Shown: one piece after another, positions 32,501 to 56,109 of the stretch
Numbering within the stretch: the first letter of the stretch is position 1
How the letters are laid out: every line of letters begins with the position of its first letter
Source: Caecitellus pseudoparvulus
Taxonomy: Eukaryota > Protista > Bigyra: Bicosoecida
Reading direction: 5' to 3'
Length of the DNA: 64,000 nucleotides
Assembly: GCA_965644315.1 (NCBI GenBank)
Contig: CBFFRQ010000050.1
Span: 1 to 64,000 of the forward strand
Made by a program: the position numbers and the translations under genes
Notes under the pieces: generated by a model
The model's input: the letters and a program-made list of their open reading frames with translations, nothing else
Databases searched by the model: none
What the model was told of the DNA's origin: nothing

Positions 32501-35500
32501 GGGCCAGGCTCTCCGGACACAGGCTGGGGCGGTGCGTCAGCTGGGGTGTCCAGGGTGACGAGGGGGGAGGCTGACCCACCCGTGCCCACGGTGGTGCGGT
32601 GCAGCACCGCAACGTCAGCGAGGCGCCCCCGAGGAGGGGTGCAGGGCAAGGCACCCAAGTCCTCTGTTGTCGTGGACCGGCCACGACGCAGGGGGGGTGG
32701 TGCACCCCCCCCGGCACCGACAGAGGGCGCATCGATGGGGATAGCAGGGGACTTGCCCCGCCCGCTGTGCTCGGAGAGACGGGAGGGTGCTCGGGAGGGC
32801 ACATGCTCCCCCGCCGCCCGTGCTCTGAGCTCGGCACCATCAGCCTGCAGCGCCACCAGGTCCCCGATGGCTGACGAGAGCTTCTCCAGGTAGGGGTGGG
32901 AGGCCAGGGTGTAGGCGATGATGCTGCCGGGCAGGTTGGGGGACACGTTCACCACCGTGTCGAAGCGGCCCAGGGGGAAGTCTAGGTGCCGCATCCAGAC
33001 CTTGGGGTCCTCCGGTTCGCCCAGATCCACGTCGATGCGGCGAGAGAAGGATGTGTCTGCCTCCCCAGCCTGTGTGCGAGGTGAGGCGGCTGCGGCCTCG
33101 CTGGCACCACTGCTGCTGCCGGCGCCCCCCCCCGGTGCCGTGCTGGCGGACGTGAAGAAGCGACGGCTGCCCTTCTGGGAGAGGACGGGCTCCACCACCA
33201 CCCCTGAGGGGCGTGCGCAGATGCGGACATGATGGCTGAGGTGCTCTCCGCTTTGCTGTCGCACACGCTGGCGGGCCACAGGCACGGTTGGGCGGAGAGA
33301 GGACGATGTCCGTTTGCTGGCGCCACTATCCTGGGTCGCCGTTGACTCACCTCCATCCCCAGCACCTGCAGGGTTGGTTACTGCCGCCTGTGTCGTGGGT
33401 TTTGGGGAGTCGGACGGGGCGGACTTGGGGGAGGCGTCTTCGGCAGCGGAGGGCGCCCCCGCCGCGGGCAGCCAGGCAGCTGGGATGCCCCCGCGTTTGT
33501 GCGATCCCGCCAGGCCTCGTCGATCGGTCGCAGTGTTGCCCAGGGGGATGCGCTGGGTGCTGGAGAAGCCCTTCTCAGACATGGAGCTGTGCTGGGAGCC
33601 GACCTTGCTGCCGTGTGTCTCCGAGGAGCTCGTGGACACGGCACTGCTGGGCAACCGAGGAGACGCCTCCGCCTCCGCTGGTCCCGTGGCCCCGGTGGAC
33701 GATGCAGAGTCTGAGACCTTTGTGGCTAGGACAGGACCGGCGCCGGCAGTGCCGGGCACGACGTCCGGCACGACAAGGATGCGGCCACAGGCGGTGAGGT
33801 GCTGCTCCAGCTCTTGCACCGCCCAGTTCCAGCTGTACACCAGGTCCATTGCCTGCAGCGTGTCGTGGGAGCCGCCACCGGATGGGGGAGGGGGCACCGC
33901 GGAGCTGGGCAGGGGCCCAGCTCGGCTGCGTGTTGGGGAGGGCGGCTTAGTGGAAGGCGGCACGATGGAGGTCGTGGAGGTGCCCTGGCGCAGGGGTGGG
34001 CCCATGGGTGCCTGCAAATGCTCGGACACCGCCTCCAACGCTGCATCCCGTGCAGCCTCCGCCGCAACAAGGAGGGATGCCAACACTGCCGCGGTGTCGG
34101 TCACGGACAGGACAGGGGGCACATCCGCCAGAGGGCCCTTGGAGTCAGCGCCTCGTGTGGCGGCCTCCGCAGCACGCAGTGCGCCCGTGGCCGCCGCAGA
34201 GGATGTGACCACAGCAGTGGACGCGACAGACGCCACGTCAGCTGCGCCGGACACGGCCCTGCCGTCGTTCGCACTGGTGGGGTGCAAGGCGTGCGTCAAG
34301 TCCAGCAAGTGCACGGCCTCCCACAGGCGGGCATAGCTGTCCAGCGTTGCAGAGTCCGTGTCAGGCGGAAGGCCCAGGCTGTCCAGCAATTCATCCCGAC
34401 CAGGTAGAGACACGACCCCGACGGCATGTGCCGTTCCGTCCTCGTCTGCCTCCTGCTGCCGCACTTTGCGGGCGACCTCCACCGCCTTGGCGTACACAGC
34501 AGGGACGTCCAGTGCGCGGGCGAGCGCGGCAAGCACTTCTTCGTGCATCTTGAACCGCCGCACGGCCGCCGTGGCCATGCCCTGCAGCAGCTCTGCGAAG
34601 CAGGCGTCGCGCCAGTCACTGTTCGCGAGGGCGGCTGCGCGGAAGACCAGGGCGTGCGGCTCCAGCGGCGTCTGCTTGATGCTGATGATGCGCTGGCCGT
34701 GGCTGAACATGAGTTCCGTGTGGGTGGTGGGGGCGGGCAGCCCAGGGTGGGGAGTCGCGGGGTCGTACCCCCCCGCCAGGGGCAGGTCAACCATGGTGGG
34801 GCGGGGCTGGCAGGCCCAGGGGGAGGGGCGCGTCACTGCCTCTTGCAGCAGGGGCGCCACGACGCTGTCTTGGTAGGCGCCGTACCCCGCCATGGCTGCC
34901 ACGAAGCGGCCGAAGCTCATGTTGGCTGCCATTGCCGGGAGCTGGGCTGGCTCCACCAGCACGGGCGTGGCCTGGGCCGCCTCTACCATGCTTTCGCTGG
35001 CTGCGCTGTACGAGACGCCGCCGCTCTCTAACTGCAGCGTGTGTGGCGGCGCGTCTGGGAGGGACTCGGCCGTGCTCAAGTGGCTTCCCTGGCGCTGCAG
35101 CGCCTCGCCGTCCAGGACGATGGAGACACGGGGCGTGGAGCGGCTGGGCGGCGACGCCGTCGCGATGCTGAGCGTTCCCGTGCCTCCCTCGGCAGGCGTC
35201 GTGTCCTCTTCCAGCCCCGCGTCGTGCAGTTGCAGGCCTGCAATGAGTGGCTGCCGTGCTCGGGCACACATGGTGTCGTCCAGGCTGGCGCCCTTGTGGG
35301 AGGCGACCCGGCGCTTGGAGCTGCTGGCGTCGGATGGCGCCCGCGCCTTGAGCCGGGAGCGCAGGGCAGGGGACAACAGCGGGTGCACCCACCGGAGCCA
35401 GCGTGGCCGACCCCACAGTAAGACCTCCCCCGGCTCCCCCGTGCTGCCGGCAGTGCTGCCACGCAGGCCCGCCATCATGGTGGAGCTGCGCGAGGAGGCG

Positions 35501-38416
35501 GTGATGTCCAGGCGCATGTGGCCGTGGAACAGCGCCAGGCGCAGTGCGGAGGGGTCTCGCTTGTCGGCGCCCCGCACCTGGTCCCCCTCCCACCCAGTCC
35601 ACAGCGACGCGAGGAACTGGCCCAGGGAGATGTCGTGCGGCCCCGCCATGGGCAGGGTGCGGTGTGTCAGCGGGCACAGCTGTGCGAACGTTGTGCGGTG
35701 TGTGACCATGCGGGACACTTGGAGCCCCTCTGGGAGGAGGGAGCTGCGAATGATGCTGGCCAGCGCCACATGCACCGCAGGGCCGAGAGTGGCCCAATGC
35801 CGCAGGGAGGTGAAGGGGGGCACGAGGAGGGGGGTGCTGCCCGTAGCCCCTGCAGGCAGGCGGGTGCCTGGCGGGGACAGGGGTGTTGCCGCGTCCGCCG
35901 CCCCCGCGCCGGGAGCAGCACTGCCACCCGCCTCATCCCCAGCCCCGCCCGACCAGCGCGGCACCTTGCCTGCTGACAGCGACGCCACTGCAGACAGAGA
36001 CAGCACCTGCGCGCCATCCGACACGCGAGGAGAGTGGCTCCACGCTCGCAGTAGCTTCAGTGCTGCATGGGGGGATAGGCTCCGCTCCGCCCGCGCCCCG
36101 CCTCCGTACAGTTTCGGCAGCCCCGGCGCCTTGCCGGTGCCGGGCGCGCCTTGCGTCAGGATGCGGCTGGCAGGGGTGAAGGCGGGAGCCAGCCACCAGC
36201 AGGCGGCAGGAGACAGCTGCATGAGGGCAGTGAGGTTGCGCAGGAGGCGCCCCTCGAAGGCCACTCGCTGGGCTGGCGTGGGGATCGCCCCAGGCACGGG
36301 CAGGGGAATGAGGCTGCCGCCCAGAACACCCTGCAGCTCCCGGAAGGCTTTGGCTGAGAGGGAGGGCGGAGTCGAGTCTGGCGGCTCCTGGGCGGGGGGC
36401 GGGAGGGGCACCACAAGTGGGCGCTCGTGCAGTGCCGCGTCGATGCGGGGGCCGGGCAAGGGGCACCACGCAGGCGGTATGGCGCCCAGGTGGTACAGCA
36501 AGGCAGTGTCGGAGCGCATGGCAGCTGCTGCCTGCACGGCCAGACGCAGCAACACCTTGCACACCAGCACGGCGGAGCTGCCACCACGCAGGAGGGTGGT
36601 GGCAGCCAGGTCTGGCCGGCACCCCTCCAGCGCCACGTAGGGCACCAGCTCCACGCCAGAGAGGCGCTTGCGGTGCAGGCCGCCCACGCGACGGGCAGGC
36701 TGGCGTGTCGCCGAGGTGGGGCGGTCCGCAGGGGGGGCCGTGTCCCCCCTCTCCAGCGCCGCAGCCTCCGTGTTGGTGACGGCCATCTGCACGATGCGGA
36801 AGGCGGAGCAGGAGCCGACGATGACGGCGGAGGACAGGACGGGCGCCGAGTGCACGGAGCGCAGAGGCGTAGCGCCTGTCGCCCGCGCCACCCGGTTCAG
36901 CACAGTCCCCTTCACGTTGTGTACCACCGTCACGTTCTTCTCGCGCAGTGCCGCCATGGCCTCGTGGGAGACCTCCCCAGAGCACAGCAGCACGTCTGGC
37001 TGCAGGGCCACCAGCTTCGCCACGCACAGGCGGATGTAGGCGTCTGCCTGTGTGTACAGGGAGTCAGTGGACACGTGCCCCTGGCCGGAGGTGACGTTGG
37101 ACAGGCCCACCCCACCCATGAGCAGCACGAGGCGGGGGGAGGAGATGTCGGACGCCATGCTCTTGTGCGCGATGTTGCCGCGAAAGACTACCCCCGACGT
37201 GATGGAACATGGGCCCACCCACCAGGGGTCGCCTTCCTGCGCCGGTGAGGTCGGCTGGGCCGTGGCGGGGCGGGGCGCGGGAGCACCAGCCGCTTCCCAG
37301 CCCCGCTCCAGCGCCGCCATGAGTTGAGGCAGGTGCGTCAGACGCACAGGCTGGCTGTGGCGGTCCGTAGGCAGAGTAGCAGTCGTGCTGGCCCACAGGG
37401 CCGCGACGCCTGCCTCGGAGCCCGGACCCTGAACACCCACCGGCGCCACCAGTGTGCCAGAGCGGGCAAGGGCATCCCCCAGCCCCGAAGCCACGGCAGC
37501 GGCCAGGGACCGCGACACCTCGACGGCAGTGCCGCCAGGAATGGCCTTCACGCGGTGGTACCTGTCCACGTCCAAGGAGTCCCCCGCCACGACGTTGGGC
37601 GTGACTGTGCTCGCGACCCGTGTGGCGAGGGTGGCCAGTGTGACCACCCAGTGCATGGCGTGGCGGGAGGTGGCCAGGCCAGGAATGAAGGCCACCCAGC
37701 GCTGCAGGAGCAGGAGGAGATGGGCGTGCGCCACCTGCTGCAGCGATCGCAGGCGTCGCCGTGCGGGGTCTGTGCTGGGGCGGGGGTCACCCGCCAACGC
37801 CGCGATGTGGGCTGGTGCGTAGGCCCGCACCATGGACCCCGTGGGGTGCATCTGGGAGGCGATGTGCCGCCTGGCGGCGGCGTCCCCCCCTCCAGGGGGG
37901 GCAAGGGGCTTGGCAGGGGCATCTGAGGGCGCCGCGTGGGGGGCCTGCCGCCCGGCCAGCCACCGGCCCACTGCCACGGCACGCGCAGCTTGGGGCGGGA
38001 CCTGCAGGTGCAGCCCATGCACAGTGCCTTCGATGCCGTACTGGGTGCCGAGAGGGGACATGATTCCAAGCGGCGCCCGCTCAGCTTCCGCCCGCTCACG
38101 CAGCCATCGCTGCTCTGCCTCCACAGTCTCCACACACCCTGCACACAAGCGAGCGCTGGCTTCTCCACCCATCATGCGGAGGTCTTTCCGCGTGGAGGAG
38201 CATGACGAGCAGAAGATCTGGGGCGGCGCGGGCTCGCATGCAGTGTGCGAAAGGCTGCAGAGCGAGTGGGGCTGCGCTGGTGCGCATGACGCGTACCTTC
38301 CCACACCACCGACAGTGGTGTCGTCGAGTGAACAGGGAGAAGGCCTTGGAACAGTGCATGCAATGCTTGGACAGGTGGTCCGGGAGCCAGAAGTCCACGG
38401 ACTCCTCAGACGCCAT
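29563..38416 (-). CDS. FAB1: FAB1/PIKfyve PI3P 5-kinase (FYVE, CCT-like, PIP5K domains), about 2900 aa
   Basis: FYVE WLPDHLSKHCMHCSKAFSLFTRRHHCRWCGK|IFCSSC (split by an intron). CCT-like GVVFRGNIAHKSM...SPRLVLL. Kinase WDTTGGKSDAEFWRTHDQRFVLK, FDLKG, MDYSLLVGVD and VGIIDYLRQW. Confidence 0.95.
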
Positions 38417-40125: not shown

Positions 40126-42580
40126 CTACGCCGTCGCCGGCAGCCTGGGCGCGTTGCCCATGTAGTCCACCGCCGACATGGTGGCGGGGTGTGGCAGGCG
40201 CAAGTCCGCAGAGTCATGGAACATCAAGCTCAGCAAGGGGCCAGGCTGCCTGCCCTCGCTGCGCACACTGCCGCCACTGCCCGCTGCGGCAGAGGACGGG
40301 TGCTGCAGGGCGCTGCCGACGCTAGGCCCGGCCACGCTCCCCCCCTTGCCCAGGGCAGCAGTCGGCAGAGGCGGCCTGCCATTGGAGCCCACTGCACTGG
40401 TGCTTGCCCTGGTGCCGGCTGCGTGCGCTCCGAAACCGATGCCGCCCGCGGCACCCCCCCCCGCCAGGTGCATGTGCAGCGCTGCGACTGATGCCGCGTT
40501 CAGACCCGACGGCACGAACCCGCCCCGCCCTCGTGAAGCTGAGTCCAGAGCCTCCACCGCATGCGCCGAGGCGGCGAGGCGGTCCAAGCCGCTGTCAGGA
40601 GCTGTGTGTGCGGAGCCCGAGTCATCCCCGCCGCCTGCATGGGGCCCTCGGGGCGTGGCTTCCAAGCTAGCCAGCGCCGCGGCGGCCTCCTCAGCTGCAG
40701 CCATACTGTCCGAGTGCGCCCGCGAACCACGCCGCCGCGTGGAGGAGGCGACACTCCCAGCGTCCACATCTGCAGAGCCCACTGAGGCAGGGCCTGAGGC
40801 CTGGCCAGCGGCGGCACCCGCAGCGGCGGTGCCTCGGGGACTGGTGGCCACAGTCAGGTCACGGGGGCGTTTGACGCCTCGCCTGCGTGATTCGGCGCCC
40901 GCCCCTGCAGTGTGTGCCGGCGGCGCGGGCGGCGCAGAGGCGGCCGAGGCCAGTCCCACTGAGTGCCCTGGGTGCGCCACGAAGGCGCCCGCGGACACGC
41001 CGTACGTCGTGTGGGGCAGACCGATGCCGCCGCTGCCTGCTGCCAGGCGTGAGCGCATGCCAGGCACAGACACGGAGCCTGGCGAGCCAGCCGTCATGTC
41101 GGCGCCCATGCCGACGTGGGGATGCATGGTGGCCATGCCCATGCCGTGCATGCCGCCAGCGCCGGCGTGGCCGTGGGGGCCCCCCAGAGAGAGCGGCAGC
41201 CCCCCCCCGCCACCCCCGTGGGCCATACCTGGGTAGGGCATGAGGCCGCCCATGAGGCCGTTTGTGTGGCCAGCCATGTATGCCATGTTCATGGGGGTGC
41301 CCATGCCGTTGGTGAGGGGCAGGGAGGCACCCATGGCCCCCATCGCGTGGCTGTGGGGGGGGGCTCGGAAGGCGTCGCGGGGGGGGCCCGTGGAGGAAGC
41401 GGGCGACGCCCCGCCACCCCCGCTGGACGGCGCCCGGCGCTTGCGCTGACCGCCCTTGGCAGCCGCCGTGCCCAGGCCCCTCAGACGAGTGGGTGTGCCC
41501 CGGCGCTCGGCGGGCTTGCCACGGGAGCCACGGGAGCCCCCCGCTGATGCCGCGCGCTCCCGGCGTGCCGACGTGCCGAACTTGGAGTACCACCGGTTCT
41601 TCACAGCGTTGTCGGAGCGCCCAGGCAGCTTGCGAGCGATGACGGCCCACTTGTTGCCCAGCTCATCGTGCAGCTTGCACAGCTGAGCGTCCTCCTCCGC
41701 CGTGAAGGGCGTGTGCTTCAGCGTTGGGTCCAAGTGGTTGACCCACCGCTCCCGGCACTGCTTGCCGATGCGCCCAGGCAACTGCTTCGCAATGGCAGCC
41801 CACGAAGGGGGCCCCTTGCTTTCTGACACTAACTTGAGGATGAGGGCATCCTCCTCAGGGGTCCATGACCCCTTGATGGTGGCTGTGCAGGGCAGCGCCA
41901 AGTGAATGTAACGCCAGCGACACACGTAACGGAAGCTGCATGGCGGCTGAGATTCCGTGAGCACCACGGATTGTGACGAGTAGACGAAGCATATCGACAG
42001 CATGCACAAAGGCAGCTCAAAGAGCCGGTACCGCAGGCCCCTTCGCTGTCCGCCAGCGCAGCGGCTCAGCGGGAACGCAGGCGTTTCACGCAGAGCTGTT
42101 GCGCCGGACGCGCTCATGCTGGCGGCGCACGCCTCACGCACCTGTGCCCTGCATCATGTTTGCATGCCTGTGCAGGCACTCCACATCACTGCGGCGCCCA
42201 TCCAGATATTCTTCCGAAATCCGCTTCCACCTGTTTTCACTGCCCAGCGCAGCCACGCCACGACGTAAGCACTCATCCTCTTCGCTGCTCCAGGCCTGCA
42301 ACGAGAAAAAGGGCAGGTATGGTGAACCATACATGGCTCGCTGTGCAAGCTCGCCACATTCAAGGCCCTGCTTGCTCAGCAAGTGCTGCCCACTGGGTGG
42401 CTGACGTTACGGCACATGCACTGGCGAAGTGCTCACCTTCTTGCGCTTGCCTCGAGAGGTGGCAGCCGTGCCACTTGACCTCGGGCGGCGAGTGGGCGCT
42501 CTTCGCCTCTTGTCCGGGCTCTGTGCTGAAGCGGGCGCGCTGAAGGCCAGCAGGGCCGAGACGGCGTCCTTGTTGTCCAT
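40126..42580 (-). CDS. Three-repeat MYB transcription factor (3R-MYB), 2 introns
   Basis: R1 WSSEEDECLRRGV...WKRISEE...RSDVECLHR; R2 KGSWTPEED...PGRIGKQCRERWVNHLDP; R3 FTAEED...GNKWAVIARKLPGRSDNAVKNRWYS. Confidence 0.9.
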
Positions 42581-43194
42581 GGCGCTGGTGCTAAGCGCAC
42601 TCCAACCGTCGTGACACAGGACGCGGCGTGCTCAGTCAGCAGGACACGAACCCCTGTTCCCACGACCGGAGGTGCACTAAAACTGGTGCAATGTGCATGC
42701 CCGGTGCGCGGATATTGTGGTGCGGTGGCTTGTTGACGTGGTGGAGCGCTGGCTGGCGTTGGCGCTGTGGCCAAGTGCGGATTTTGCACCCCTCCCCGCA
42801 ACCCGCCCCGCATCCTTGCACACACAGAGACAGGCTGACTGCAAGAGGAGGGGGAAGTACTTATACAGCTTTCAATTCCCTACGATCCGCCTCTGCCTCG
42901 GACAAGAAGTTCAGAAAGAACTCGAGCAACTGCCCAGCATGCGCGGAGCTGAGCTGCGTGGTCTGCGAGCTGGGGCAGACGGCATGCCTTGCTGTGGCTT
43001 CCAGGCTCTTCACCGCCGCCCCCGCGGAGCAACGTGGGTATTGTATATCTACAGAGTGCCGTTGCGGGGACGACACTGGCGGCAAATGAATTCGACCCTA
43101 CTTGCGCGGAACTTGCTGTGACTCCCCTCCCAACTCCGGCACGTTGCCCGTGGCGCTGCACGACATACATACACCCACCACAGAACCGCCCGGC

Positions 43195-43491
43195 ATGTCG
43201 GGCAGTCTGACAGGGCGGGTGGCAGTGGACGTGGATGGGGACAGCCCGGCAGGCACCACGTCGCCCCAAGCTCCCTTCATGCTGGCGGTGGACTTGCAGC
43301 GCATGGACGCCGAGGCACGCTGGAGCCTGAGCAGCCTCAAGCGCCTCACGCTCAAACACACCATTCCCGGCATGGTGGTGGTGCACAGTGCGGGGGATGA
43401 CGGCGCCCCCCGCCGCCTCGCCTTTGTTGTGGACCGCTTGTCCGCCCTCGTGCACAGCGTGCAGGAAGCCATCAAGCGCAGGCGCAGGTGA
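43195..43491 (+). CDS. Small hypothetical protein (possibly the last exon of a longer gene)
   Basis: The frame has host-like codon usage and ends LAFVVDRLSALVHSVQEAIKRRRR. Upstream exons could not be resolved. Confidence 0.4.
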   Translation: MSGSLTGRVAVDVDGDSPAGTTSPQAPFMLAVDLQRMDAEARWSLSSLKRLTLKHTIPGMVVVHSAGDDGAPRRLAFVVDRLSALVHSVQEAIKRRRR

Positions 43492-43537
43492 AGGCGGCAG
43501 GCATGCATTGAAAGGGAGGAATGTGTGCGTGTGTTTG

Positions 43538-45475
<1,938 letters not shown>

Positions 45476-48400
45476 TCAAATCATATCCTTCAAGTCATCA
45501 AACTGGGCCGCTTGCTGCCTGACACTGTCTGGGATCTTGCGATCACCCGTCAGCGCCAGCAGCTCACGCACCACATCCACGTGGCCGTTCTGGCAGGCAT
45601 GTCGGAAGCCGTACTCAGGGTTGCCATTGAAGCCAGCATGCACATCCACAGCTCGATCGCCCGTCAGCGCCAGCAGCTCACGCACCACATCCACGTGGCC
45701 ATTCGCACAGGCGGTCCGGAAGCCGTACTCAGGGTTGTCTCCGACCCCTGCATGCACATCCACAGCTCGATCACCCGTCAGCGCCAGCAGCTCACGCACC
45801 ACATCCACGTGGCCATCCGCACAGGCGATCCGGAAGCCATACTCAGGATCGCCATTGAAGCCAGCATGCACATCCACAGCACGGTCACCCGTCAGCGCTA
45901 GCAGCTCCCGCACCACATCCAAGTGCCCTTCCGCACAGGCAAGCCGGAAACCATACTCAGGCACACCCTTGAAGCCTGCGTGAACATCCACGGCTCGATC
46001 ACCCGTCAGCGCCAGCAGCTCACGCACCACATCCACGTGCCCATACTGACAGGCAGCTCGGAAGCCATACTCAGGGTTGTCTCCGACCCCTGCATGCACA
46101 TCCACGGCTCGGTCGCCCGTCAGCGCCAGCAGCTCACGCACCACATCCACGTGGCCATTCGCACAGGCGGTCCGGAAGCCGTACTCTGGATCGCCCCCGA
46201 CCCCTGCATGCACATCCACAGCTCGATCACCCGTCAGCGCCAGCAGCTCACGCACCACATCCACGTGGCCGTTCGCACAGGCAAACCGGAAGCCGTACTC
46301 TGGATCGCCCCCGACCCCTGCATGCACATCCACAGCTCGATCACCCGTCAGCGCCAGCAGCTCACGCACCACATCCACGTGGCCATCCGCACAGGCGATC
46401 CGGAAGCCATACTCAGGATCGCCATTGAAGCCAGCATGCACATCCACGGCTCGATCACCAGTCAGCGCCAGCAGCTCACGCACCACATCCACGTGGCCGT
46501 TCTGGCAGGCAAACCGGAAGCCGTACTCAGGATCGCCATTGAAGCCAGCATGCACATCCACAGCTCGATCACCAGTCAGCGCCAGCAGCTCACGCACCAC
46601 ATCCACGTGGCCGTTCTGGCAGGCAAACCGGAAGCCGTACTCAGGATCGCCATTGAAGCCAGCATGCACATCCACAGCTCGATCACCAGTCAGCGCCAGC
46701 AGCTCACGCACCACATCCACGTGGCCATCCTGGCAGGCAAACCGGAAGCCGTACTCAGGGTTGTCTCCGACCCCTGCATGCACATCCACGGCTCGATCAC
46801 CCGTCAGCGCCAGCAGCTCACGCACCACATCCACGTTGCCGCTCGCACAGGCAGCTCGGAAGCCAGCCTCAGGATCGCCCCCGACCCCAGCGTGCACATC
46901 CACGGCTCGATCACCCGTCAGCGCCAGCAGCTCACGCACCACATCCACGTGGCCGTTCGCACAGGCAGCTCGGAAGCCGTACTCAGGATCGCCCCCGACC
47001 CCAGCGTGCACATCCACGGCTCGCTCACCCGTCAGCGCCAGCAGCTCACGCACCACATCTACATGTCCTTTCGCACAGGCGAGCTGGAAGCCACCCTCAG
47101 GGTCGCCTCCAAGCCCAGCATGCACGTCCACCTCACGATGCCCAGTCAGAGCCAGCAGCTCCCGCACCACATCCACGTGGCCGTTCGCACAGGCAAACCG
47201 GAAGCCGTACTCTGGATCGCCCCCGACCCCTGCATGCACATCCACAGCTCGATCGCCAGTCAGCGCCAGCAGCTCACGCACCACATCCACGTGGCCATTC
47301 GCACAGGCGATCCGGAAGCCGTACTCAGGATCGCCATTGAAGCCTGCATGCACATCCACGGCTCGATCACCCGTCAGCGCCAGCAGCTCACGCACCACAT
47401 CCAGGTTGCCGTTCTGGCAGGCAGCTCGGAAGCCAGCCTCCCTATCGGCATGCACATCCACGGCTCGATCACCCGTCAGCGCCAGCAGCTCACGCACCAC
47501 ATCCACGTGGCCATCCGCACAGGCAAACCGGAAGCCGTACTCAGGGTTGTCTCCGACCCCTGCATGCACATCCACGGCTCGATCACCAGTCAGCGCCAGC
47601 AGCTCACGCACCACATCCACGTGGCCATCCGCACAGGCGGTCCGGAAGCCGTACTCAGGATCGCCATTGAAGCCAGCATGCACATCCACAGCTCGATCAC
47701 CCGTCAGCGCCAGCAGCTCACGCACCACATCCACGTGGCCGTTCGCACAGGCAAACCGGAAGCCGTACTCTGGATCGCCCCCGACCCCTGCATGCACATC
47801 CACAGCTCGATCACCCGTCAGCGCCAGCAGCTCACGCACCACATCCACGTGGCCATTCGCACAGGCGATCCGGAAGCCATACTCAGGATCGCCATTGAAG
47901 CCAGCATGCACATCCACGGCTCGATCGCCAGTCAGCGCCAGCAGCTCACGCACCACATCCACGTGGCCGTTCTGGCAGGCAAACCGGAAGCCGTACTCTG
48001 GATCGCCCCCGACCCCTGCATGCACATCCACAGCTCGATCACCAGTCAGCGCCAGCAGCTCACGCACCACATCCACGTGGCCATTCGCACAGGCGGTCCG
48101 GAAGCCGTACTCAGGATCGCCATTGAAGCCAGCATGCACATCCACAGCTCGATCGCCAGTCAGCGCCAGCAGCTCACGCACCACATCCACGTGGCCGTTC
48201 TGGCAGGCAAACCGGAAGCCGTACTCTGGATCGCCCCCGACCCCTGCATGCACATCCACAGCTCGATCACCAGTCAGCGCCAGCAGCTCACGCACCACAT
48301 CCACGTGGCCATTCGCACAGGCGGTCCGGAAGCCATACTCAGGATCGCCATTGAAGCGAGCATGCACATCCACAGCTCGATCGCCAGTCAGCGCCAGCAG

Positions 48401-50224
48401 CTCACGCACCACATCCACGTGGCCATCCGCACAGGCGGTCCGGAAGCCGTACTCAGGGTTGTCTCCGACCCCTGCATGCACATCCACAGCTCGATCGCCA
48501 GTCAGCGCCAGCAGCTCACGCACCACATCCACGTTGCCACTCCTGCACGCGTCCTGGAAGGCAGCTGTCGAGTCCATTCCAGAACTCACTGCTTTGTCAG
48601 GAGGAGGTCGCCTTGCGACAGGCTCCTCTTGCCCCCTTTCGCCGGACTGCACCCGCTTCGACAAAGCCTCAAAGGCGCGTGCTGCACGCTGCAGCCCCTC
48701 CACGCCCTCACCCAGCGCAAGGCATGCCATCACATAAGCACCCATGCACCGACTTCCACCGCCTTCCACGGCCTCCAGCGCACGGGCTACCGCCTGACCA
48801 CCGACCTCACCGCTGCCCACGAACACCTGCCCTGCGCCCCCTGCACCTGCCCCTGCGCCCCCCCCGACGCCCAGCACACTCCGCACCACGCCTGACACAC
48901 CCGCACTCCCACCTCCAACACCCGCACCCTCCTGCCCACCACCTCGCCACACACCAGCACATGCACTCAGCAACACCTCACACCCACCCCCATCCAGTGC
49001 CCCCACCAGATCACCCACACTGTCACTCTCCACTCCCACCACCACAAAGCTCCCAACACCCACACCACCCACCTCCACTCCACACGCCTCCGCCACAGCA
49101 CACGCCCCCAACACCCGCACAGCCACGCGCTGCTTCACATCCAGCCCAACATCGCACCACGCCTCGTCGTCCAAGAACGTGCTCAGCGGCCACCCCAACT
49201 CGCACTGCACCTGCACTGCAATCGTGCTTCGCTCCCCCACCGGCTCGTCAGCCCTGCCATCGATGCAAGCATGCTTCAACGCCACTCGGTGTGGCCGCTG
49301 CGCCATCCGAGGCAGCCCCAGACCGACCCGGACGCCTTCAGCACGCTTCAGCCTCGCCACACTCCCCTTCAACACACCCACACCAACACTCAACACCGAC
49401 GCCCACTCTTCAACGTCCGCAGCGACAGTGCCAGGGTCAGGGACGATGTGACTCTCCACAATGCTCACACTTGCCGTGGCGCTGTTCTTGCACACCACAC
49501 CCTCCGCCACATCAGCACCTGACACAGACACCAGCCTCCGACTCGCGATCCCATTACCACACCCCAACAGCCCCCGCAGCTCTTCCACCGCAGTCGCCGC
49601 TGACTCCAAGTGCGCCGCTGCACCCTCGCTCATCAGCTCACCTGCTGCGCCGCCACGTAGCCACTCCGCCTGCTGATGCATGAATGCCAATGCATCTACC
49701 ATGGCATCATCGCCACCGCCGCCACTACCCTCCACACCGGCACCAGCCACCGCTGCATCCGCAACCGGCACCTCCCGCTCGCCCCACCATCGTGTCAAGT
49801 CCGCCAGTGCACCCTCTGCACTCACCCCACGCCGCACACTGCCCCACGCACCCACCACATCACCCCACACCGCATCCCCGTTCGGCACGGCATCCACGCC
49901 CACACCAGACACCGCCTGACGCAGCACACCCATCGCAGCGAAGCACCGGAACGACAAGTACTCCAGCGCGTCACGCACCTCCCCGCGATCAATCTGCCCC
50001 GCCAACACTCCAGCCCGCTCCAACAGAGCACCTCCTGCATCACGCAGCAGCCCATCCAGCTCCGCCAGGCTCATGTCCGGGGCGTCTCCATCTGCACCAG
50101 GTGCTTCTCCTCGACCAATGGTCGCCAGCCCTCGCAGTGCTGCGCCATGCTTCCACTCGCTCCCGGCCATGCACTTCAACTTCTCCAAACACCTCACCAC
50201 CATCTCCGGATTGAAATCCTCCAT
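45476..50224 (-). CDS. Large intronless ankyrin-repeat protein: helical N-terminus, possible degenerate kinase-like domain, 27 ANK repeats
   Basis: 1633-codon ORF (open to 50377; likely Met at 50224). Repeats xxxxPEYGFRxACxxGHVDVVRELLALTGDRAVDVH match the ankyrin consensus. Confidence 0.9.
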   Translation of the reverse strand: MEDFNPEMVVRCLEKLKCMAGSEWKHGAALRGLATIGRGEAPGADGDAPDMSLAELDGLLRDAGGALLERAGVLAGQIDRGEVRDALEYLSFRCFAAMGVLRQAVSGVGVDAVPNGDAVWGDVVGAWGSVRRGVSAEGALADLTRWWGEREVPVADAAVAGAGVEGSGGGGDDAMVDALAFMHQQAEWLRGGAAGELMSEGAAAHLESAATAVEELRGLLGCGNGIASRRLVSVSGADVAEGVVCKNSATASVSIVESHIVPDPGTVAADVEEWASVLSVGVGVLKGSVARLKRAEGVRVGLGLPRMAQRPHRVALKHACIDGRADEPVGERSTIAVQVQCELGWPLSTFLDDEAWCDVGLDVKQRVAVRVLGACAVAEACGVEVGGVGVGSFVVVGVESDSVGDLVGALDGGGCEVLLSACAGVWRGGGQEGAGVGGGSAGVSGVVRSVLGVGGGAGAGAGGAGQVFVGSGEVGGQAVARALEAVEGGGSRCMGAYVMACLALGEGVEGLQRAARAFEALSKRVQSGERGQEEPVARRPPPDKAVSSGMDSTAAFQDACRSGNVDVVRELLALTGDRAVDVHAGVGDNPEYGFRTACADGHVDVVRELLALTGDRAVDVHARFNGDPEYGFRTACANGHVDVVRELLALTGDRAVDVHAGVGGDPEYGFRFACQNGHVDVVRELLALTGDRAVDVHAGFNGDPEYGFRTACANGHVDVVRELLALTGDRAVDVHAGVGGDPEYGFRFACQNGHVDVVRELLALTGDRAVDVHAGFNGDPEYGFRIACANGHVDVVRELLALTGDRAVDVHAGVGGDPEYGFRFACANGHVDVVRELLALTGDRAVDVHAGFNGDPEYGFRTACADGHVDVVRELLALTGDRAVDVHAGVGDNPEYGFRFACADGHVDVVRELLALTGDRAVDVHADREAGFRAACQNGNLDVVRELLALTGDRAVDVHAGFNGDPEYGFRIACANGHVDVVRELLALTGDRAVDVHAGVGGDPEYGFRFACANGHVDVVRELLALTGHREVDVHAGLGGDPEGGFQLACAKGHVDVVRELLALTGERAVDVHAGVGGDPEYGFRAACANGHVDVVRELLALTGDRAVDVHAGVGGDPEAGFRAACASGNVDVVRELLALTGDRAVDVHAGVGDNPEYGFRFACQDGHVDVVRELLALTGDRAVDVHAGFNGDPEYGFRFACQNGHVDVVRELLALTGDRAVDVHAGFNGDPEYGFRFACQNGHVDVVRELLALTGDRAVDVHAGFNGDPEYGFRIACADGHVDVVRELLALTGDRAVDVHAGVGGDPEYGFRFACANGHVDVVRELLALTGDRAVDVHAGVGGDPEYGFRTACANGHVDVVRELLALTGDRAVDVHAGVGDNPEYGFRAACQYGHVDVVRELLALTGDRAVDVHAGFKGVPEYGFRLACAEGHLDVVRELLALTGDRAVDVHAGFNGDPEYGFRIACADGHVDVVRELLALTGDRAVDVHAGVGDNPEYGFRTACANGHVDVVRELLALTGDRAVDVHAGFNGNPEYGFRHACQNGHVDVVRELLALTGDRKIPDSVRQQAAQFDDLKDMI
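45542..48562 (-). repeat. Tandem array of 27 units of 114 bp (38 aa), one shortened to 34 aa
   Basis: CCGTCAGCGCCAGCAGCTCACGCACCACATCCACGT recurs with a 114-bp period (e.g. 45547, 45661). Confidence 0.97.
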
Positions 50225-50737
50225 GCCGGCATTTACTCCTCCAGATCCACCTATCCTCTGTCCTGATGCAGCTGCCTGCGCAATGGAGTGTGCCAAGAGG
50301 GCCGTGCCGCGAGCTCTCCATTGCGATGTGCCTTTCGGCAAGTACTGGCCATTGCGACACGCCGCACTCGACTGCACGCACCATGGGAGGTGCCCAGCTG
50401 GGTTGTGTCAAGTTCGGCTGAGGCCGTTATGATGCTTTGAGCAAGGCCAAACAGAGCCTACAGCTGTTGACTGTGTCTGCACGATCGCGAAGTAGCACAG
50501 TGGGCAACTTCCGCACCGTGCCAAGATTGCCTTCACGCGCACAGTGCAGGCCGTAAATCCAGTGACTGGGGCGACAAGACACGCCCCATGCATGCTGTGG
50601 ACTGTTACGTGTCAAAGGGCGTTGAAATTTTGGCAGCATCCAGTGTATTGCACCCGAAGGATGTCACCTTGCGTTGGAACGTGAAAGATCCTAGTTGCGG
50701 TCATCTTTACCTTCAGTCAGTGCACGTTGCAGTGCAT

Positions 50738-52218
50738 TCAAGCGCGCTCCTCGCTCGTGCCAGTCTCAGAGGCGCCCTCTCCAGCCCCAGCGGCAGCCTC
50801 GTACAGCGCAGCCACCTTGGTGGTGGTGCACTGCGTCATGGCCAGGAACGCTTCCTCCTCTGCACCCCCAGCCTTGCCCACCTCCTCCTCCGCCTCTGAC
50901 TCCAGCACAGCCATGAAGGCAGCCCCCTCGTCAGGGCACACCACCCGCGCCATGCAGTAGTTCAGCGCCACAGAGGCATTACGTCGGATGTCCTCTGTCG
51001 CCGCCATCTGCAGCGCTGCCAAGTGGGGTGCACACCGCTCATCGATAGTGGCGAGTGTGGCGGCAGCCTCTGCAGCGGGTCCGGGGGGGGCTGAGTCTGC
51101 CGGAGCGCTGGCGCCTGCTTGGGCAGAGCCGCCGTTCAGGGCCTTGTCCACAGCCTTGGGCCGGGCGTTGGGGTTCAGGCCGTCTGAGTAGAAGTACCCG
51201 CGTCGCAGTGCGGCCAAGGCGCGAGAGGGGAACATGGCCAGGCGGTCCAGGACAGCCTGGGGCGAGTCCAGGGCGGGGCGCACGTCCACGTGGATGGGCC
51301 CCGTCATGCCGTCTGCCGCCGCCTCTGGCGAGGGCGCGTCGTTTCGGGCGTTGTCGTAGTAGTAGTCGATGATGTATCGCACTTCCTTGTCCCCACGCGT
51401 GACGAACCAGTCGTGGCGGTCGAAGGGGTACCCGAACCCGAAGAAGCTCTTCACCTTGGCCTTCAGGGACAGGTCGTGCGGCTTGCCGGTGAAGCGGCGC
51501 AGGCGGGGGCCGCCTTCGTCGTGCTCGCTGCGGTGAGGATGGGGGGATGCAGTGCAGTGCGTGCGGGGTGCGCCTGGCCACGGCCGGTGGGGGCACGCAC
51601 TCGAGGTGTCGGTTTTCCCACTCCAGCAGGCGCTTCCACGTCGTCTCGTTCATATTGTTGTGGATGGCGATGACGACGCTCATGTCGTCCTCAGTGACGC
51701 CGTCGGCCTTGCCCTTGCGCGAGAGGGCATTGAAGAACATCTGCTCAGACGGATACGTCCACGTGCCGTCAGTTCCGCCCTTGGGGATGCTACTGACTTG
51801 GCGCTTGGTGCTCAGTTCCTTCGTCTGGCCAGGAGCAGGCAGCTGCAAGGCAATGGGGGGGCGGACGGGCGCGCTCGTGATACGCGGGGGGCGGTTCAAT
51901 TTCCGCATCCTCACCACGTACCTGGTTGGGGTTCTTCGGCATGTTGTTAGTCGGGTCCACTTCCTGCATGTACACGTTGTACACCTTTCCATCTTTGGAT
52001 CCCGGCTTCTGGTTGTCCGAGTGCATGGGGCAGGCACTGATGTCGCCGCCCACTGGGTGTCCAGCTGGCTTGCCTGTCGCTGCGCCGTGGTCCACCGGGC
52101 ACTTGCCGCTTGATGCAGGCGCTGGCGCGGGTGCTGGAGTAGCAGCTGCCCCTCCAGTGTGCATCGGGCATCCTGGGGGTGGCTCCTGCGCTGCCTGAGC
52201 ACTGACGGTGTTCCCCAT
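50738..52218 (-). CDS. HCCS: Holocytochrome c synthase (cytochrome c heme lyase), 2 introns
   Basis: N-terminal CPM/CPV heme motifs, WTYPSEQMFFNALSRKG, IHNNMNETTW, PFDRHDWFVTR, VRYIIDYY and DVRPALDS. Confidence 0.95.
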
Positions 52219-52629
52219 GGTAGTGACGTGATTCTTCGCAGGCACCTTGGAGCCAAAGAGACAGGCTAAAATGTGGAGTCGGGCACCGACGCGAAAGCGC
52301 CGATCTGCACTGTACAGCTTGATGCGATGTACCGCGAAAGCGTCAGTGGGAGTTTGGTTTTGGAACGCCTCTCTGACTGGTGCTGCCAGTGCAAGGGTGC
52401 GTGCTGCGGGGTGCTCTGGCTTGCAGCAACTGTGTGCTGTGAGCGTTGACAGCCAAATCCCGTGCCCCAGCCGCTCCTTCTCAAAGCGGTTCCCTTGCAT
52501 GCAGCGCATGGGAATTCAAGCTTTCTAAGAAAACCGTGCGCCTTCCTCCTCCGCCCTACCTCCACCCTACACTCCAGGAGGCGGCACTGTGGACCGTCGC
52601 CCGTGCGGTTTTTGGCCTGCTCTGGCGCC

Positions 52630-55600
52630 ATGGCGAGCAGCTCCACATGGACTGCTGAAGACAGCCTGACAGGCCAGCAGTTCCGCCGCACGCGGCAATC
52701 TTCCTCCTTAACGCAGCCTGCAAGCGGCATTGACGCCATGCTGCAGGCAGTGCAGCATGGCGGACCTGTGCTGGCCATGCGTGACCGGGGCATCACGGCA
52801 GCTGCGGTGGAGGTGTTGGTGGCCTCCAGCGCCTTCTCCGGCCTGCACACGATCGTGCTGAACGGCAACCGCATCGGCAACGTCGGCGCACGCATCTTGC
52901 TGGAAGGCGTCATGGCCTGTGGCGGCGCCCTGCCCCTCGCCACCCTGCACCTGCGCGACTGCTACATCTCAGCAGAGGGCGCAGCGGCCATGGCATCGGC
53001 CCTTCCCAGCGCACAGCACCTGCAGGAGCTGGATGTCTCCGACAACATGCTGCAGTCTCGGGGCGTGTCGGCGCTGGCAGGCGCCTTGCCCCTGCTGCCC
53101 AGCTTGCGCCGCCTCGCGTGTGACAACACCTACGCTCTGTCCGAGGGGGTGTCTGCACTGGCCGCCTCGGGGGCCAGCTGTGGCAGCCTCTCCCACATCT
53201 CCTGTGCCGGCAACCACCCGGGAGATGTGGGTGTGACGGCCATGGCGAGCCTGGTGCAGGCCTCGCGTAGCCTGCGCTACCTGGACCTCAGCTCCACGCC
53301 ACACCCCGCTGGGCCCTGGTCGGGGGCACCCCCCTCCATCGCAGCGCATGCTGCTGGGGGGCTGCCGCCAGATCCCTCCTTCGCCGCCCACAGACCCGGT
53401 GGGGAGAGCTGTGTCCAGCTGTCCTGGGGCGCGGCCACCCACAGCACCCCTCCTAGTGTCCTGGGCAGCTCCAGCGCCAGCATCTCCAAGGCGCTGTCCC
53501 GCACTGTGTTCGCCCACCGCAGGGGGGGGGTGGAGCCCGGCACGGTTACTGCCCTGGCCCACGCAGCTGCGCAAGCACAGGGCCTGCAGCACCTCGCCCT
53601 CCGCGGCCTGCGCCTGCCCCTGCCCACCCTGCAGGCGCTGCTGGAGGCAGTGGCAGGCGTGGGGGACGAGGGGCCCCCGTCGCTGTGCTCGCTGGACCTG
53701 GCACACAACCCCCAGCCGTTGGCGGAGGGGGCGGAGCTGGGCCAGGCGGCCCTGCAGTGTGCCCAGCGCCACACACACTTGGTGCACCTGGACCTGGTGG
53801 GGGACGGCGTGCCGGGAGAGGACATGGATGCCCTGGCCAGGCAGCTGGCGCAGAATGCCGTGGCGTACGCTCGAGGGCGCGCCGACGCCGACCTGCGCAA
53901 GCAGGTCGCAGCTGCCGAGGAGGAGGTCGCATCCCTGCGCTCCCAGCGCGAGGTCGCCGCGCAAGCTCAAAGCACGGCTCAGAGCAGCCAGCAGGAGCTG
54001 CAGGTGACATCTCTCACTCTGAGCGAGGAGGTGGAGGAGGGGGGGGGGTCGCTAGCCGCCCCCGACCCCGCCCTCACGGCCCGCCTGGCCGCCTTGGCAA
54101 AGGAGGCCTCAGCCCTGCGCCACTCCCTGCCCGAGCTGCAGAGTGCGGCGGCGGCAGCGGAAGCCGCCCAGGCAGCAGAGGAGGCGCGAGTGGCCACCCT
54201 GACGCAGCGTGTGGCCGCCGCCCGGGCCGCCCGGCAGTCCATGGCCCAGGCTGTCGCCACGGCCGAGACAGAGGCACAGGCGCTGCGGCGGCAAGTGCAG
54301 GGCCTGGAGGAGGCCACGGCACGCCACAGGGCACGGGAGGCGGCTGCCGAGGCGGCGGCCGTGTCCTTGGAGGCAGAGCTGCTGGCCCTGCAGGATGCCG
54401 TGGCGGCGGGGAACGCGGAGTTGCACGCCATGCGAGTCACTCGCGACGCCCTCCGACGTAGCACCGTCCCGGCAGCGGCGGCGGCAGAGGCGTCGGCGCG
54501 GGTGGCCGCCACTGCGGCAGCCACGCGCGAGGCCGACTTGCGGGGGCGTGTGGCAGCCTCCGCGGCCTTGGCTGAGAGTGTGCGCCACGCTGTGGCCAAC
54601 GAGCGCCATGCACTGGCCACCGCCCCCCTGCGTCTGCCCGAGACGCCCGCCGTGCCCCTCACGCCCCTCGCGCCGCGCACAGTGCTGGTGTCCCCAGCAG
54701 CCTCCTCGCCGCCCCAGCCCCCCACGCCAGAGGACGAGTCGCCCCCCCCAGGCACGCCCCCGGCGTCGCCGCCGCCGCCACTCCCCATGCCCTCCCCCTC
54801 ACCCGAGGCGTTCCCCCTGGAGCCGGAGGTGACGCCGGGCGGCAAGGAGGGGGGTCGCCCCAGCACCCTGGCTGAGGCCCTGGAGGACCTCGTGGACCCC
54901 GCCGCCTCCGCTCTACATGTGCACGCAGCTGTGGCGCTGCGGGCTGGGACGGAGCCTGCCAAGGGGCGGGTGTTGCTGCAGCCAGTGGCGTGGCCTCCCC
55001 TGGCGGGGGAGACGCGTGATGGCGCCGCAGTGGACCCCGCCGCCCAGCACTGCCAGCTGACCTTGCGGGGGCTGTACGACGTGGGTGTCGCCCGGCAGGA
55101 CGCGGTGCTGGAGGTTCGCTTCGGGCGGGGCGCAGGCGCCACCTCCCCGGGCCCCGGCTCCCCTGCTGGCGTGGTGTCCCCCTTCAGCCCCGGCAGCCAG
55201 CGCAGGTGTGCTGTGCTGGCGTCCTGGGTGACGTCCGTCCGCATCCTGCGGGGGTCCATCACCTCCATCACGCTTGGGCTGCAAGGTGCCCCCCACGGCG
55301 CACCGCCCTGCCTGCGCATCGTCGTGTCAGTGCCGGCTGTGGCGCGGGCCTTCCTAGAAGCACTTGCCAGGCATTTGCCTGCGGCCCAAGCGGCCTCCCT
55401 GACCCCCGCCGCAGCCGACCTGTACCTGTCGTCAGCGGAGGAGGGGGAGCGGACACCGCCGCCCTCACAGCAGGGTTCGCCTGTGGGGCAGGCCGACGCT
55501 GGGGAGGAGACGGAGGAGGAGCAGGTGCAGTGCGTGCCCAGCAGCCCGCCGGTGCTGGTCATGTCCCCCGCTGGTTCGGAGAGTGACTCGGAGGGTGGGC

Positions 55601-56109
55601 CCACCAGTGACTTGGGGTTCGTGTCCCCGCACTCCGGGGGAGGGGGGGGGGACCTGCACGCGCCAGCGCCAGAGGGCGTGGACCCCATGACACTCGTCGC
55701 TGCGGAAGTGAAGGAGGAGGAAGAGTACGCTGCCGCACGGGCCGCTGCAGCCGCCGCGTCACCGCCCACCTCTCCCGCAGCGCCCGCTGCCCAGTCGCCC
55801 CCAGTGTCGTCTCCAGCGCTGTCCCGTCCCGCGACGCCCGCGCCCCTGTCGGAGAGTGACATACCGCCCATGCCAGAGGGCGCGACGCCGGCACTGGTGC
55901 AGCGCATCCGGTCCATGACGTGGACGGTGCTGCTGTCTATCAGAGAAGATGAGATCATGCCGACCTTCTCGGAGATCCGGCATGCTGTGCGTGCCGCTTT
56001 GAAGGTGAAGCCTGGTGTCCTGCAGGGGCACGACTGGCGGCATTGGTTTCGCGGCGTGGTGAACGATTTCACCGAGCAGCTGGATGCTGCCGCGCAGGAG
56101 CAATTCTGA
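52630..56109 (+). CDS. RI-like leucine-rich-repeat protein with coiled coil and C-terminal DEK-C-like helical domain
   Basis: LHTIVLNGNRIGNVGA, LATLHLRDCYISAEGA and LQELDVSDNMLQSRGV repeats; an Ala/Glu-rich coiled coil; a Pro-rich linker. Confidence 0.8.
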   Translation: MASSSTWTAEDSLTGQQFRRTRQSSSLTQPASGIDAMLQAVQHGGPVLAMRDRGITAAAVEVLVASSAFSGLHTIVLNGNRIGNVGARILLEGVMACGGALPLATLHLRDCYISAEGAAAMASALPSAQHLQELDVSDNMLQSRGVSALAGALPLLPSLRRLACDNTYALSEGVSALAASGASCGSLSHISCAGNHPGDVGVTAMASLVQASRSLRYLDLSSTPHPAGPWSGAPPSIAAHAAGGLPPDPSFAAHRPGGESCVQLSWGAATHSTPPSVLGSSSASISKALSRTVFAHRRGGVEPGTVTALAHAAAQAQGLQHLALRGLRLPLPTLQALLEAVAGVGDEGPPSLCSLDLAHNPQPLAEGAELGQAALQCAQRHTHLVHLDLVGDGVPGEDMDALARQLAQNAVAYARGRADADLRKQVAAAEEEVASLRSQREVAAQAQSTAQSSQQELQVTSLTLSEEVEEGGGSLAAPDPALTARLAALAKEASALRHSLPELQSAAAAAEAAQAAEEARVATLTQRVAAARAARQSMAQAVATAETEAQALRRQVQGLEEATARHRAREAAAEAAAVSLEAELLALQDAVAAGNAELHAMRVTRDALRRSTVPAAAAAEASARVAATAAATREADLRGRVAASAALAESVRHAVANERHALATAPLRLPETPAVPLTPLAPRTVLVSPAASSPPQPPTPEDESPPPGTPPASPPPPLPMPSPSPEAFPLEPEVTPGGKEGGRPSTLAEALEDLVDPAASALHVHAAVALRAGTEPAKGRVLLQPVAWPPLAGETRDGAAVDPAAQHCQLTLRGLYDVGVARQDAVLEVRFGRGAGATSPGPGSPAGVVSPFSPGSQRRCAVLASWVTSVRILRGSITSITLGLQGAPHGAPPCLRIVVSVPAVARAFLEALARHLPAAQAASLTPAAADLYLSSAEEGERTPPPSQQGSPVGQADAGEETEEEQVQCVPSSPPVLVMSPAGSESDSEGGPTSDLGFVSPHSGGGGGDLHAPAPEGVDPMTLVAAEVKEEEEYAAARAAAAAASPPTSPAAPAAQSPPVSSPALSRPATPAPLSESDIPPMPEGATPALVQRIRSMTWTVLLSIREDEIMPTFSEIRHAVRAALKVKPGVLQGHDWRHWFRGVVNDFTEQLDAAAQEQF

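What the first reader, a model, noticed from the sequence alone, without database searches (positions are those of the whole stretch)
45542..48562. Combinatorially shuffled ankyrin array: a natural DARPin-like diversifying receptor?
Seen: 27 units of 114 bp have a nearly invariant scaffold (GHVDVVRELLALTGDRAVDVH). Variation is concentrated at the beta-loop tetrad (VGDN/FNGD/VGGD/FKGV/LGGD/FNGN), the residue in FRxAC (T/F/I/A/L/H) and the two residues before GH (A/Q then D/N/K/S/Y/E). The alleles recur in different combinations (FNGD with T-AN, I-AN, T-AD, F-QN, I-AD; VGDN with T-AD, F-AD, F-QD, A-QY, T-AN), which implies sub-repeat recombination or gene conversion rather than plain duplication. 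Established: the loop and the two pre-GH positions form the ankyrin binding surface randomised in DARPins, and fungal NLR-like proteins diversify near-identical WD/ANK/TPR repeats in a similar way. Inference: this could be a reprogrammable recognition module (anti-viral, prey or allorecognition) in a protist.
Basis: partly seen in the sequence, partly recalled or inferred. Interest (0 to 1): 0.85.

Follow-up and report, generated by a model that had tools for sequence, protein, structure and literature searches.

The report
Pseudokinase gene with shuffled ankyrin array
A marine single-celled eukaryote has about 80 genes that join an unknown helical domain and a catalytically dead kinase to rows of near-identical ankyrin repeats whose binding face is reshuffled by recombination; this resembles fungal immune receptors without their usual nucleotide-binding switch, but what the proteins bind and do is untested.

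Summary
Observation confirmed: 27 ankyrin units of 38 aa (one of 34) end an intact 1582-aa ORF (50224-45476, minus strand). The scaffold is under strong purifying selection (N/S 0.05-0.10). Variation sits at six of the seven positions randomised in designed ankyrin libraries. Short cassettes recombine between units: 63% of site pairs are incompatible, rising with distance, and none of 150 clonal simulations matched this. Positive selection is not shown for this gene (ratio 0.8-1.5, not significant) and is modest family-wide, at three helix sites only. At least 72 near-complete paralogues exist. An inverted copy of this gene, 92-98% identical over most of its non-array DNA, carries a different array (75%). 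Best reading: a NOD-free sensor-switch receptor diversified by ordinary unequal crossover and conversion, as in fungal HIC-NLRs. Function is untested. The scan already reported this family, with the same pseudokinase reading, on other contigs of this genome.

The parts
45476..50224 (-). Whole intronless ORF, 1582 aa from the first ATG; no signal peptide or clear membrane helix
   Evidence: hydropathy maximum 1.79 lies inside the kinase fold, N-terminal 40 windows at most 0.26
49775..50209 (-). All-helical bundle, aa 6-150 (six helices); no structural match, not matched to the MLKL four-helix bundle
   Evidence: AF2 pLDDT 83; best VIA Z 6.5, none at 8 or more; Foldseek and ESM blank; dN/dS 0.2-0.3
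49562..49711 (-). Helical hairpin, aa 172-221, between bundle and kinase fold (in the position of MLKL's brace; analogy only)
48704..49573 (-). Protein-kinase fold, aa 218-507, without beta-3 Lys, HRD or DFG: predicted pseudokinase
   Evidence: AF2 pLDDT 78, pTM 0.79; VIA Z 13.9 IRAK4 (rmsd 3.5, 224 aligned), Z 13.2 MLKL pseudokinase, all 50 rows kinases; ESM features; motif columns
48479..48592 (-). Ankyrin unit 1 (N-cap-like, no loop cassette)
45539..48478 (-). Ankyrin units 2-27, 114 bp each, with recombining loop, position-14 and position-17/18 cassettes
47351..47452 (-). Unit 11: 34-aa unit with a shortened loop
45476..45538 (-). C-cap of 20 aa and stop, of the type used by the main clade of paralogues
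43153..50593 (.). Block (this gene plus the whole DHFR-TS gene) with an inverted copy at G000:C50:152005-158422; the copy's array is about 9 units shorter and different
43538..45253 (-). Downstream neighbour: fused DHFR-thymidylate synthase, four copies in the assembly

Best explanation
A cytosolic sensor-switch receptor of a lineage-specific family. The C-terminal ankyrin array is a protein-binding surface (inferred from fold and site pattern). Its specificity is renewed by ordinary unequal crossover and short-tract gene conversion between 114-bp units: this keeps the scaffold homogeneous, re-deals a small pool of loop and helix cassettes and changes unit number (shown from sequence). Occasional exchange with other family genes probably feeds the pool (suggested). 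The dead kinase acts as a conformational switch or dimerisation scaffold in place of the NOD of an NLR, and the helical bundle is the output domain (both inferred by analogy with MLKL and fungal NLRs). The likeliest ligands are foreign proteins, for example of giant viruses, virophages or ingested bacteria (guess).
For: Recombination: 254 of 406 informative site pairs incompatible, 30% at 1-3 nt and about 70% beyond 20 nt, PHI-type p 0.0002-0.002, Rm 11; 0 of 150 clonal simulations reach either statistic; silent markers travel with the cassettes. Six of the seven most variable positions are library-randomised positions, hypergeometric p 1.7e-5, and the same positions peak in 219 units of the family, with 19 amino acids at position 14. 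Framework N/S 0.05-0.10. Helix sites 14/17/18 exceed the silent rate family-wide: 1.6-1.7 (bootstrap 1.2-2.4) or 1.26 (p 0.006). Kinase fold without catalytic residues, under purifying selection 0.2-0.5. 81 matches on 43 contigs, open frames 516-1917 aa among the near-complete ones. The sister copy has a replaced array. Fungal HIC-NLRs show the same regime (PMC4986451, PMC13449251).
Against: No ligand, expression, localisation or phenotype. dN/dS is not significant for this gene; the loop and the a-priori seven-site set are about neutral (0.8-1.0), and silent-site saturation may inflate the family figure. The helical bundle matches no known death or effector domain. Relatives exist with no ankyrins (P0015, P0012), and arrays exist without the pseudokinase (C54/C157). 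Giardia Nek pseudokinase-ankyrin proteins have a similar layout and are discussed as targeting scaffolds (PMC3218828).
Confidence: 0.45

Rival explanations
1. Housekeeping or developmental adaptors like the Giardia Nek/Protein 21.1 family: the array targets the dead kinase to host structures, and surface sites vary because they are only loosely constrained.
For: Same kinase-dead plus variable-ankyrin layout and similar scale of expansion (133 of 198 Neks, 1-26 repeats; PMC3218828); loop N/S about neutral.
Against: Giardia repeats are divergent and most Neks are stable between strains; here the units are near-identical, actively recombined, and the array differs between copies that are 92-98% identical over most non-array DNA.
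Confidence: 0.2
2. Binders that neutralise or tag foreign proteins directly (intracellular antibody or decoy). The pseudokinase and bundle only scaffold or recruit degradation, with no switch or death output.
For: Long 27-unit surface; arrays of the same repeat occur without the pseudokinase (C54:253-256k, C157); the bundle resembles no executioner domain.
Against: Both N-terminal domains are conserved together in at least 72 genes under purifying selection; no F-box, RING or similar module found.
Confidence: 0.15
3. A by-product: any tandem array in a duplication-prone region recombines; purifying selection keeps the fold, the exposed sites drift, and the combinations have no adaptive value.
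For: Unequal crossover produces chimaeric units by default; variable-site N/S 0.8-1.5 in this gene; neighbouring units are no more different than chance; the locus sits in a duplicated block with DHFR-TS.
Against: Silent divergence is higher inside the cassettes (pS 0.41) than in helix 2 and linker (0.14), as if old alleles are retained against homogenisation; helix sites exceed the silent rate family-wide; about 80 mostly intact genes.
Confidence: 0.13
4. Programmed somatic diversification (VLR-, VSG- or DGR-like) from silent donor cassettes.
For: Cassette-like alleles; loop alleles one or two bases from those of other genes.
Against: No donor cassettes in the window; none of the seven loop cassettes is found exactly in the 33 other loci held; no adenine-specific spectrum (C/T 46, G/T 23, A/G 17); breakpoints fall throughout the unit.
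Confidence: 0.04
5. Assembly or polishing artefact that scrambled or inflated the array.
For: No long reads were available; Logan contigs do not span the array.
Against: One unbroken frame; 22 of 24 units distinct, longest exact repeat 188 nt; tight linkage of silent sites within cassettes; independent metagenome proteins vary at the same positions.
Confidence: 0.03

Closest known systems
Fungal NLRs with high-internal-conservation repeats (het-d/het-e HNWD; PNP_UDP/NACHT/ANK Pa_3_8560; PMC4986451, PMC13449251)
   Same: Three-part layout with a C-terminal array of near-identical repeats, hypervariable concave-face sites, repeat-number variation, shuffling and probable inter-gene exchange
   Different: No NACHT or NB-ARC: a pseudokinase holds the middle position; the N-terminal bundle is not a known effector domain; 38-aa ankyrin unit; unicellular marine host
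MLKL (four-helix bundle, brace, pseudokinase; PMC13519141)
   Same: Order helical bundle, two-helix connector, pseudokinase; the kinase fold superposes on rat MLKL at Z 13.2, rmsd 3.2
   Different: The bundle has six helices and did not match MLKL; many active kinases score as well or better; activation segment degenerate; MLKL has no repeat sensor
Giardia Nek pseudokinases and Protein 21.1 (PMC3218828)
   Same: Large lineage-specific family of dead kinases followed by 1-26 ankyrin repeats
   Different: Different repeat class (no TALM motif), extra N-terminal bundle, near-identical recombining units; no sequence link found
Designed ankyrin libraries (DARPin, ANK-N5C; PMC4308713)
   Same: Fixed scaffold with variation at the beta-turn and first helix; best PDB sequence hits
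   Different: Natural; five residues longer per unit; 27 units; only 3-6 alleles per site in this gene, reshuffled as cassettes rather than freely randomised
RNase L and integrin-linked kinase (ankyrin plus pseudokinase; RNase L in PMC13519141, ILK from memory)
   Same: Ankyrin sensor coupled to a pseudokinase switch
   Different: Reverse domain order, divergent repeats, single genes, no hypervariability

Membership tests
Ankyrin repeat protein | Repeats matching ankyrin profiles and solved ankyrin structures | tested here: met
   Ank_2 E 1.4e-93, 24 stretches; 55 PDB hits
HIC-repeat sensor array | Repeats 80-100% identical within the gene | tested here: met
   mean 88%, range 77-100%
HIC-repeat sensor array | Hypervariable sites on the binding face | tested here: met
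   6 of 7 overlap, p 1.7e-5, mapped by sequence alignment, not on a 3D model of the array; loop register uncertain by one residue
HIC-repeat sensor array | Repeat shuffling by recombination | tested here: met
HIC-repeat sensor array | Positive selection at the variable sites | tested here: inconclusive
   this gene 1.47, p 0.25; family helix sites 1.26-1.7; loop 0.8-0.9
HIC-repeat sensor array | Repeat-number polymorphism between strains at one locus | not testable with these tools
   only short contigs available; paralogous copies differ
NLR / STAND | Central NACHT or NB-ARC ATPase | tested here: not met
   no Pfam hit; the fold is a kinase
Pseudokinase | Protein-kinase fold | tested here: met
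   VIA Z 13.9, 224 residues; Foldseek and ESM agree
Pseudokinase | Loss of beta-3 Lys, HRD Asp or DFG Asp | tested here: met
   no HRD-type motif in 19 relatives; catalytic loop Gly/Val-rich, DFG position Ser/Gly-Ala-Cys, Lys position Ser/Tyr; motif register inferred from secondary structure
Pseudokinase | No catalytic activity | not testable with these tools
   needs an assay
MLKL / HeLo-like executioner | N-terminal four-helix bundle homologous to MLKL_N or HeLo | tested here: not met
   no match at Z 8 or more; no Pfam hit; a missed match does not prove a different fold
MLKL / HeLo-like executioner | Membrane permeabilisation on activation | not testable with these tools
   needs expression tests
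Giardia Nek/Protein 21.1 | Nek-type kinase domain and TALM ankyrin repeats | tested here: not met
   no TALM motif; the profile finds only 19 proteins, all environmental members of this family
Diversity-generating retroelement or cassette switching | Template or donor cassettes and a biased mutation spectrum | tested here: not met
   only 33 other loci could be examined

The most novel reading that the evidence does not exclude
A one-chain, NOD-free immune receptor class in a marine flagellate: a recombination-diversified ankyrin sensor controls a pseudokinase switch that releases a new kind of helical executioner domain, giving a unicellular host a repertoire of about 80 evolving receptors against viruses or other invaders.
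Probability: 0.27. Interest if true: 0.87.

Novelty: new variant of a known kind. Interest (0 to 1): 0.64.

Why it matters
How single-celled marine grazers detect giant viruses or other invaders inside the cell is largely open, and this family gives concrete candidates: about 80 genes, a mapped variable face and separable domains to test. It would show that the fungal regime of homogenised-but-hypervariable repeats has been coupled to a pseudokinase instead of a NOD. The array mechanism itself is known; the domain combination and the unmatched helical bundle are what I could not find described in the papers searched.

Tried and rejected
Pfam and PDB sequence searches of the N-terminal 541 aa found nothing; only fold prediction showed the kinase. 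Structural searches of the bundle gave only generic helical hits, so I did not call it MLKL-like by homology. The viral library gave only weak generic kinases, so there is no sign of viral origin. NLR membership rejected (no NOD). DGR or programmed switching rejected for lack of donors and spectrum. Avoidance of identical neighbours was tested and not found. Exact sharing of loop cassettes with other genes was not found in the loci held; the framework tree is poorly resolved. The organism could not be named: the thymidylate synthase homologue search timed out, the heme lyase search was uninformative, and family relatives are unnamed environmental sequences.

Full report
Observation. The array is real and as described. 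TRF reports period 114, 26.4 copies at 45540-48539. It is the 3' part of an intronless minus-strand ORF of 1582 aa, ATG at 50224 and stop at 45476. There are 27 ankyrin units (Pfam Ank_2 E 1e-93): unit 1 is cap-like, unit 11 lacks four loop codons and unit 27 runs into a 20-aa C-cap. The 24 full internal units give 22 DNA and 19 protein sequences at 88% mean identity.

Recombination (shown). The alleles are DNA cassettes with linked silent bases. Of 406 pairs of informative sites, 254 are incompatible with one tree. Incompatibility rises from 30% at 1-3 nt to about 70% beyond 20 nt (permutation p 0.0002-0.002), with at least 11 breakpoints spread over the 114 bp. In 150 simulations on the best clonal tree with rate variation, incompatibility never reached the observed 0.63 (maximum 0.52) and never showed the distance effect. 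Whole blocks were also copied (188, 181 and 164 nt exact repeats in register), and identity does not fall with distance along the array. Loop, position-14 and position-17/18 alleles assort almost freely. This is what unequal crossover and short-tract conversion produce; no special machinery is needed.

Where the variation lies (shown by alignment). The best PDB hits are designed ANK-N5C proteins, whose randomised positions 2, 3, 5, 10 and 13 form the concave binding surface (PMC4308713). Adding the DARPin position before Gly-His and the residue before the first helix (own knowledge), six of seven such positions are among the seven most variable here (p 1.7e-5); the loop register is uncertain by one residue. 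The same positions peak in 219 units of the family, with 19 amino acids at position 14, and in independent metagenome proteins.

Selection (partly shown). The framework is strongly purified: N/S 0.05 on a spanning tree, 0.10 by allele counting, p 4e-10. The variable sites evolve at about the silent rate in this gene (loop 0.82, helix sites 1.47, p 0.25). Across other genes the three helix sites exceed it modestly (1.6-1.7, bootstrap 1.2-2.4; 1.26, p 0.006 by allele counting, possibly inflated by silent saturation), and the loop does not. Silent divergence is higher in the cassettes (0.41) than in the distal scaffold (0.14), which suggests old alleles are retained. Diversifying selection is therefore plausible but not established.

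The missing half (new to this finding). The first 545 aa have no Pfam or PDB sequence match, but ESM features pointed to kinases. AlphaFold gave a confident model (pLDDT 78, pTM 0.79). Residues 218-507 align with protein kinases: IRAK4 Z 13.9, a rice receptor-like kinase Z 13.9, MLKL pseudokinase Z 13.2; all 50 rows are kinases. The catalytic loop holds no HRD, the DFG position reads Ser/Gly-Ala-Cys and the beta-3 Lys position is Ser or Tyr, while a Glu near the end of helix C is kept (register inferred from secondary structure). It is a predicted pseudokinase. Residues 6-150 form a six-helix bundle and 172-221 a helical hairpin; nothing matched them above background, including MLKL's bundle. 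All parts are under purifying selection, dN/dS mostly 0.2-0.5. No signal peptide or membrane helix is evident, so the protein is probably cytosolic.

Family. The N-terminal profile finds 81 matches on 43 contigs, 72 of them near-complete, with open frames of 516-1917 aa; some may be haplotype duplicates. The loci held carry from one to over a dozen units of the same 38-aa type. Outside this genome only 19 relatives exist among 1.84 billion representatives, and those looked up are unnamed ENA or Logan sequences; one adds Sel1 repeats and two lack ankyrins. Related DNA lies in runs of about ten studies, several of them marine metagenomes, but the contigs are too short to order the units, and no RNA evidence was obtained.

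Turnover. The gene and its DHFR-TS neighbour (43153-50593) have an inverted copy at C50:152005-158422. Flanks are 92-95% identical and the first 1400 coding bases 92-98%, yet the copy is about nine units shorter and its units are only 75% identical to ours (best 85%). Arrays of a gene without the pseudokinase (C54:253-256k, C157) are closer, 83% (best 91%), and one window loop cassette is one silent base from theirs while another shares 27 bases with the sister copy. So at least one of the two arrays was rebuilt after the duplication. Inter-gene exchange is suggested, but no loop cassette was shared exactly, so a shared ancestral pool is not excluded.

Mechanism and comparison. The regime of near-identical repeats, hypervariable concave sites, shuffling and inter-gene exchange is described for fungal NLRs, including ankyrin ones (PMC4986451, PMC13449251). 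This protein works like them at the sensor end but is not an NLR. Its front end follows the MLKL order of bundle, connector and pseudokinase switch (PMC13519141) without demonstrated homology of the bundle. Giardia Neks show that dead kinase plus ankyrin expansions can arise with no known immune role (PMC3218828). I put a sensor-switch receptor at 0.45, a housekeeping adaptor at 0.2, a plain neutralising binder at 0.15, drift at 0.13, programmed switching at 0.04 and artefact at 0.03. Repeat anatomy, recombination, fold and family size are shown or predicted here; ligand, switch action and output are inferred.

Earlier scan notes. The family was noted on other contigs of this genome, and two follow-ups reached the same pseudokinase reading. 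I saw those after my own fold result, and they are not independent support. Unchecked notes describe the host as a marine stramenopile with endogenous virophages; I could not verify this. Limits: no further genome letters, no long reads, no 3D model of the array, no spliced model joined.

Verdict. A real, well-supported recombining ankyrin array on an apparently undescribed bundle-pseudokinase-ankyrin family: a new variant of a known kind, function untested, interest 0.64.

Noticed in passing
window 43153-45430; G000 C50:156031-158422, C23:21898-24175, C212:111361-113646: The whole DHFR-thymidylate synthase gene is present in four copies (about 95% identical in the TS part, 88-92% in the DHFR part); two of them sit next to a family gene.
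   Followed up: partly
G000 C54:253600-256500 (L013-L019) and C157:1-2500 (L012, L025): Two arrays of the same 38-aa repeat without the pseudokinase, 94% identical over 1.4 kb upstream but with different unit number and order; both also look shuffled (tested for C54). They may be alleles or recent duplicates, and end in a basic tail.
   Followed up: partly
L034 (C23:48088-52620) and L035 (C69:490305-494918): The two genes end in the same DNA read in different frames, so one has a frameshifted C-terminus.
   Followed up: no
P0002, P0011, P0015 (L063), L061:5474-9625: Environmental relatives swap the tail: Sel1 repeats or coiled coil after the ankyrins, or the bundle-pseudokinase at the C-terminus of a 1608-aa protein with no ankyrins; a large Sel1 gene neighbours one relative.
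   Followed up: partly
window 48000-50000: Strong strand skew (GC skew -0.4) from Gly/Val/Ala-rich coding in the pseudokinase.
   Followed up: no
window 13927-18429 (-): 1500-aa chitin synthase ORF.
   Followed up: no
window 52462-56109 (+), 60479-63067 (-), 21368-23179 (+): Long ORFs with only a few LRRs or no Pfam match.
   Followed up: no
window 29563-38304 (-), 18801-21077 (+), 51039-52256 (-), 40126-42141 (-): Ordinary neighbours: FAB1/PIKfyve-like kinase, APC3-like TPR protein, cytochrome c heme lyase, Myb protein.
   Followed up: no
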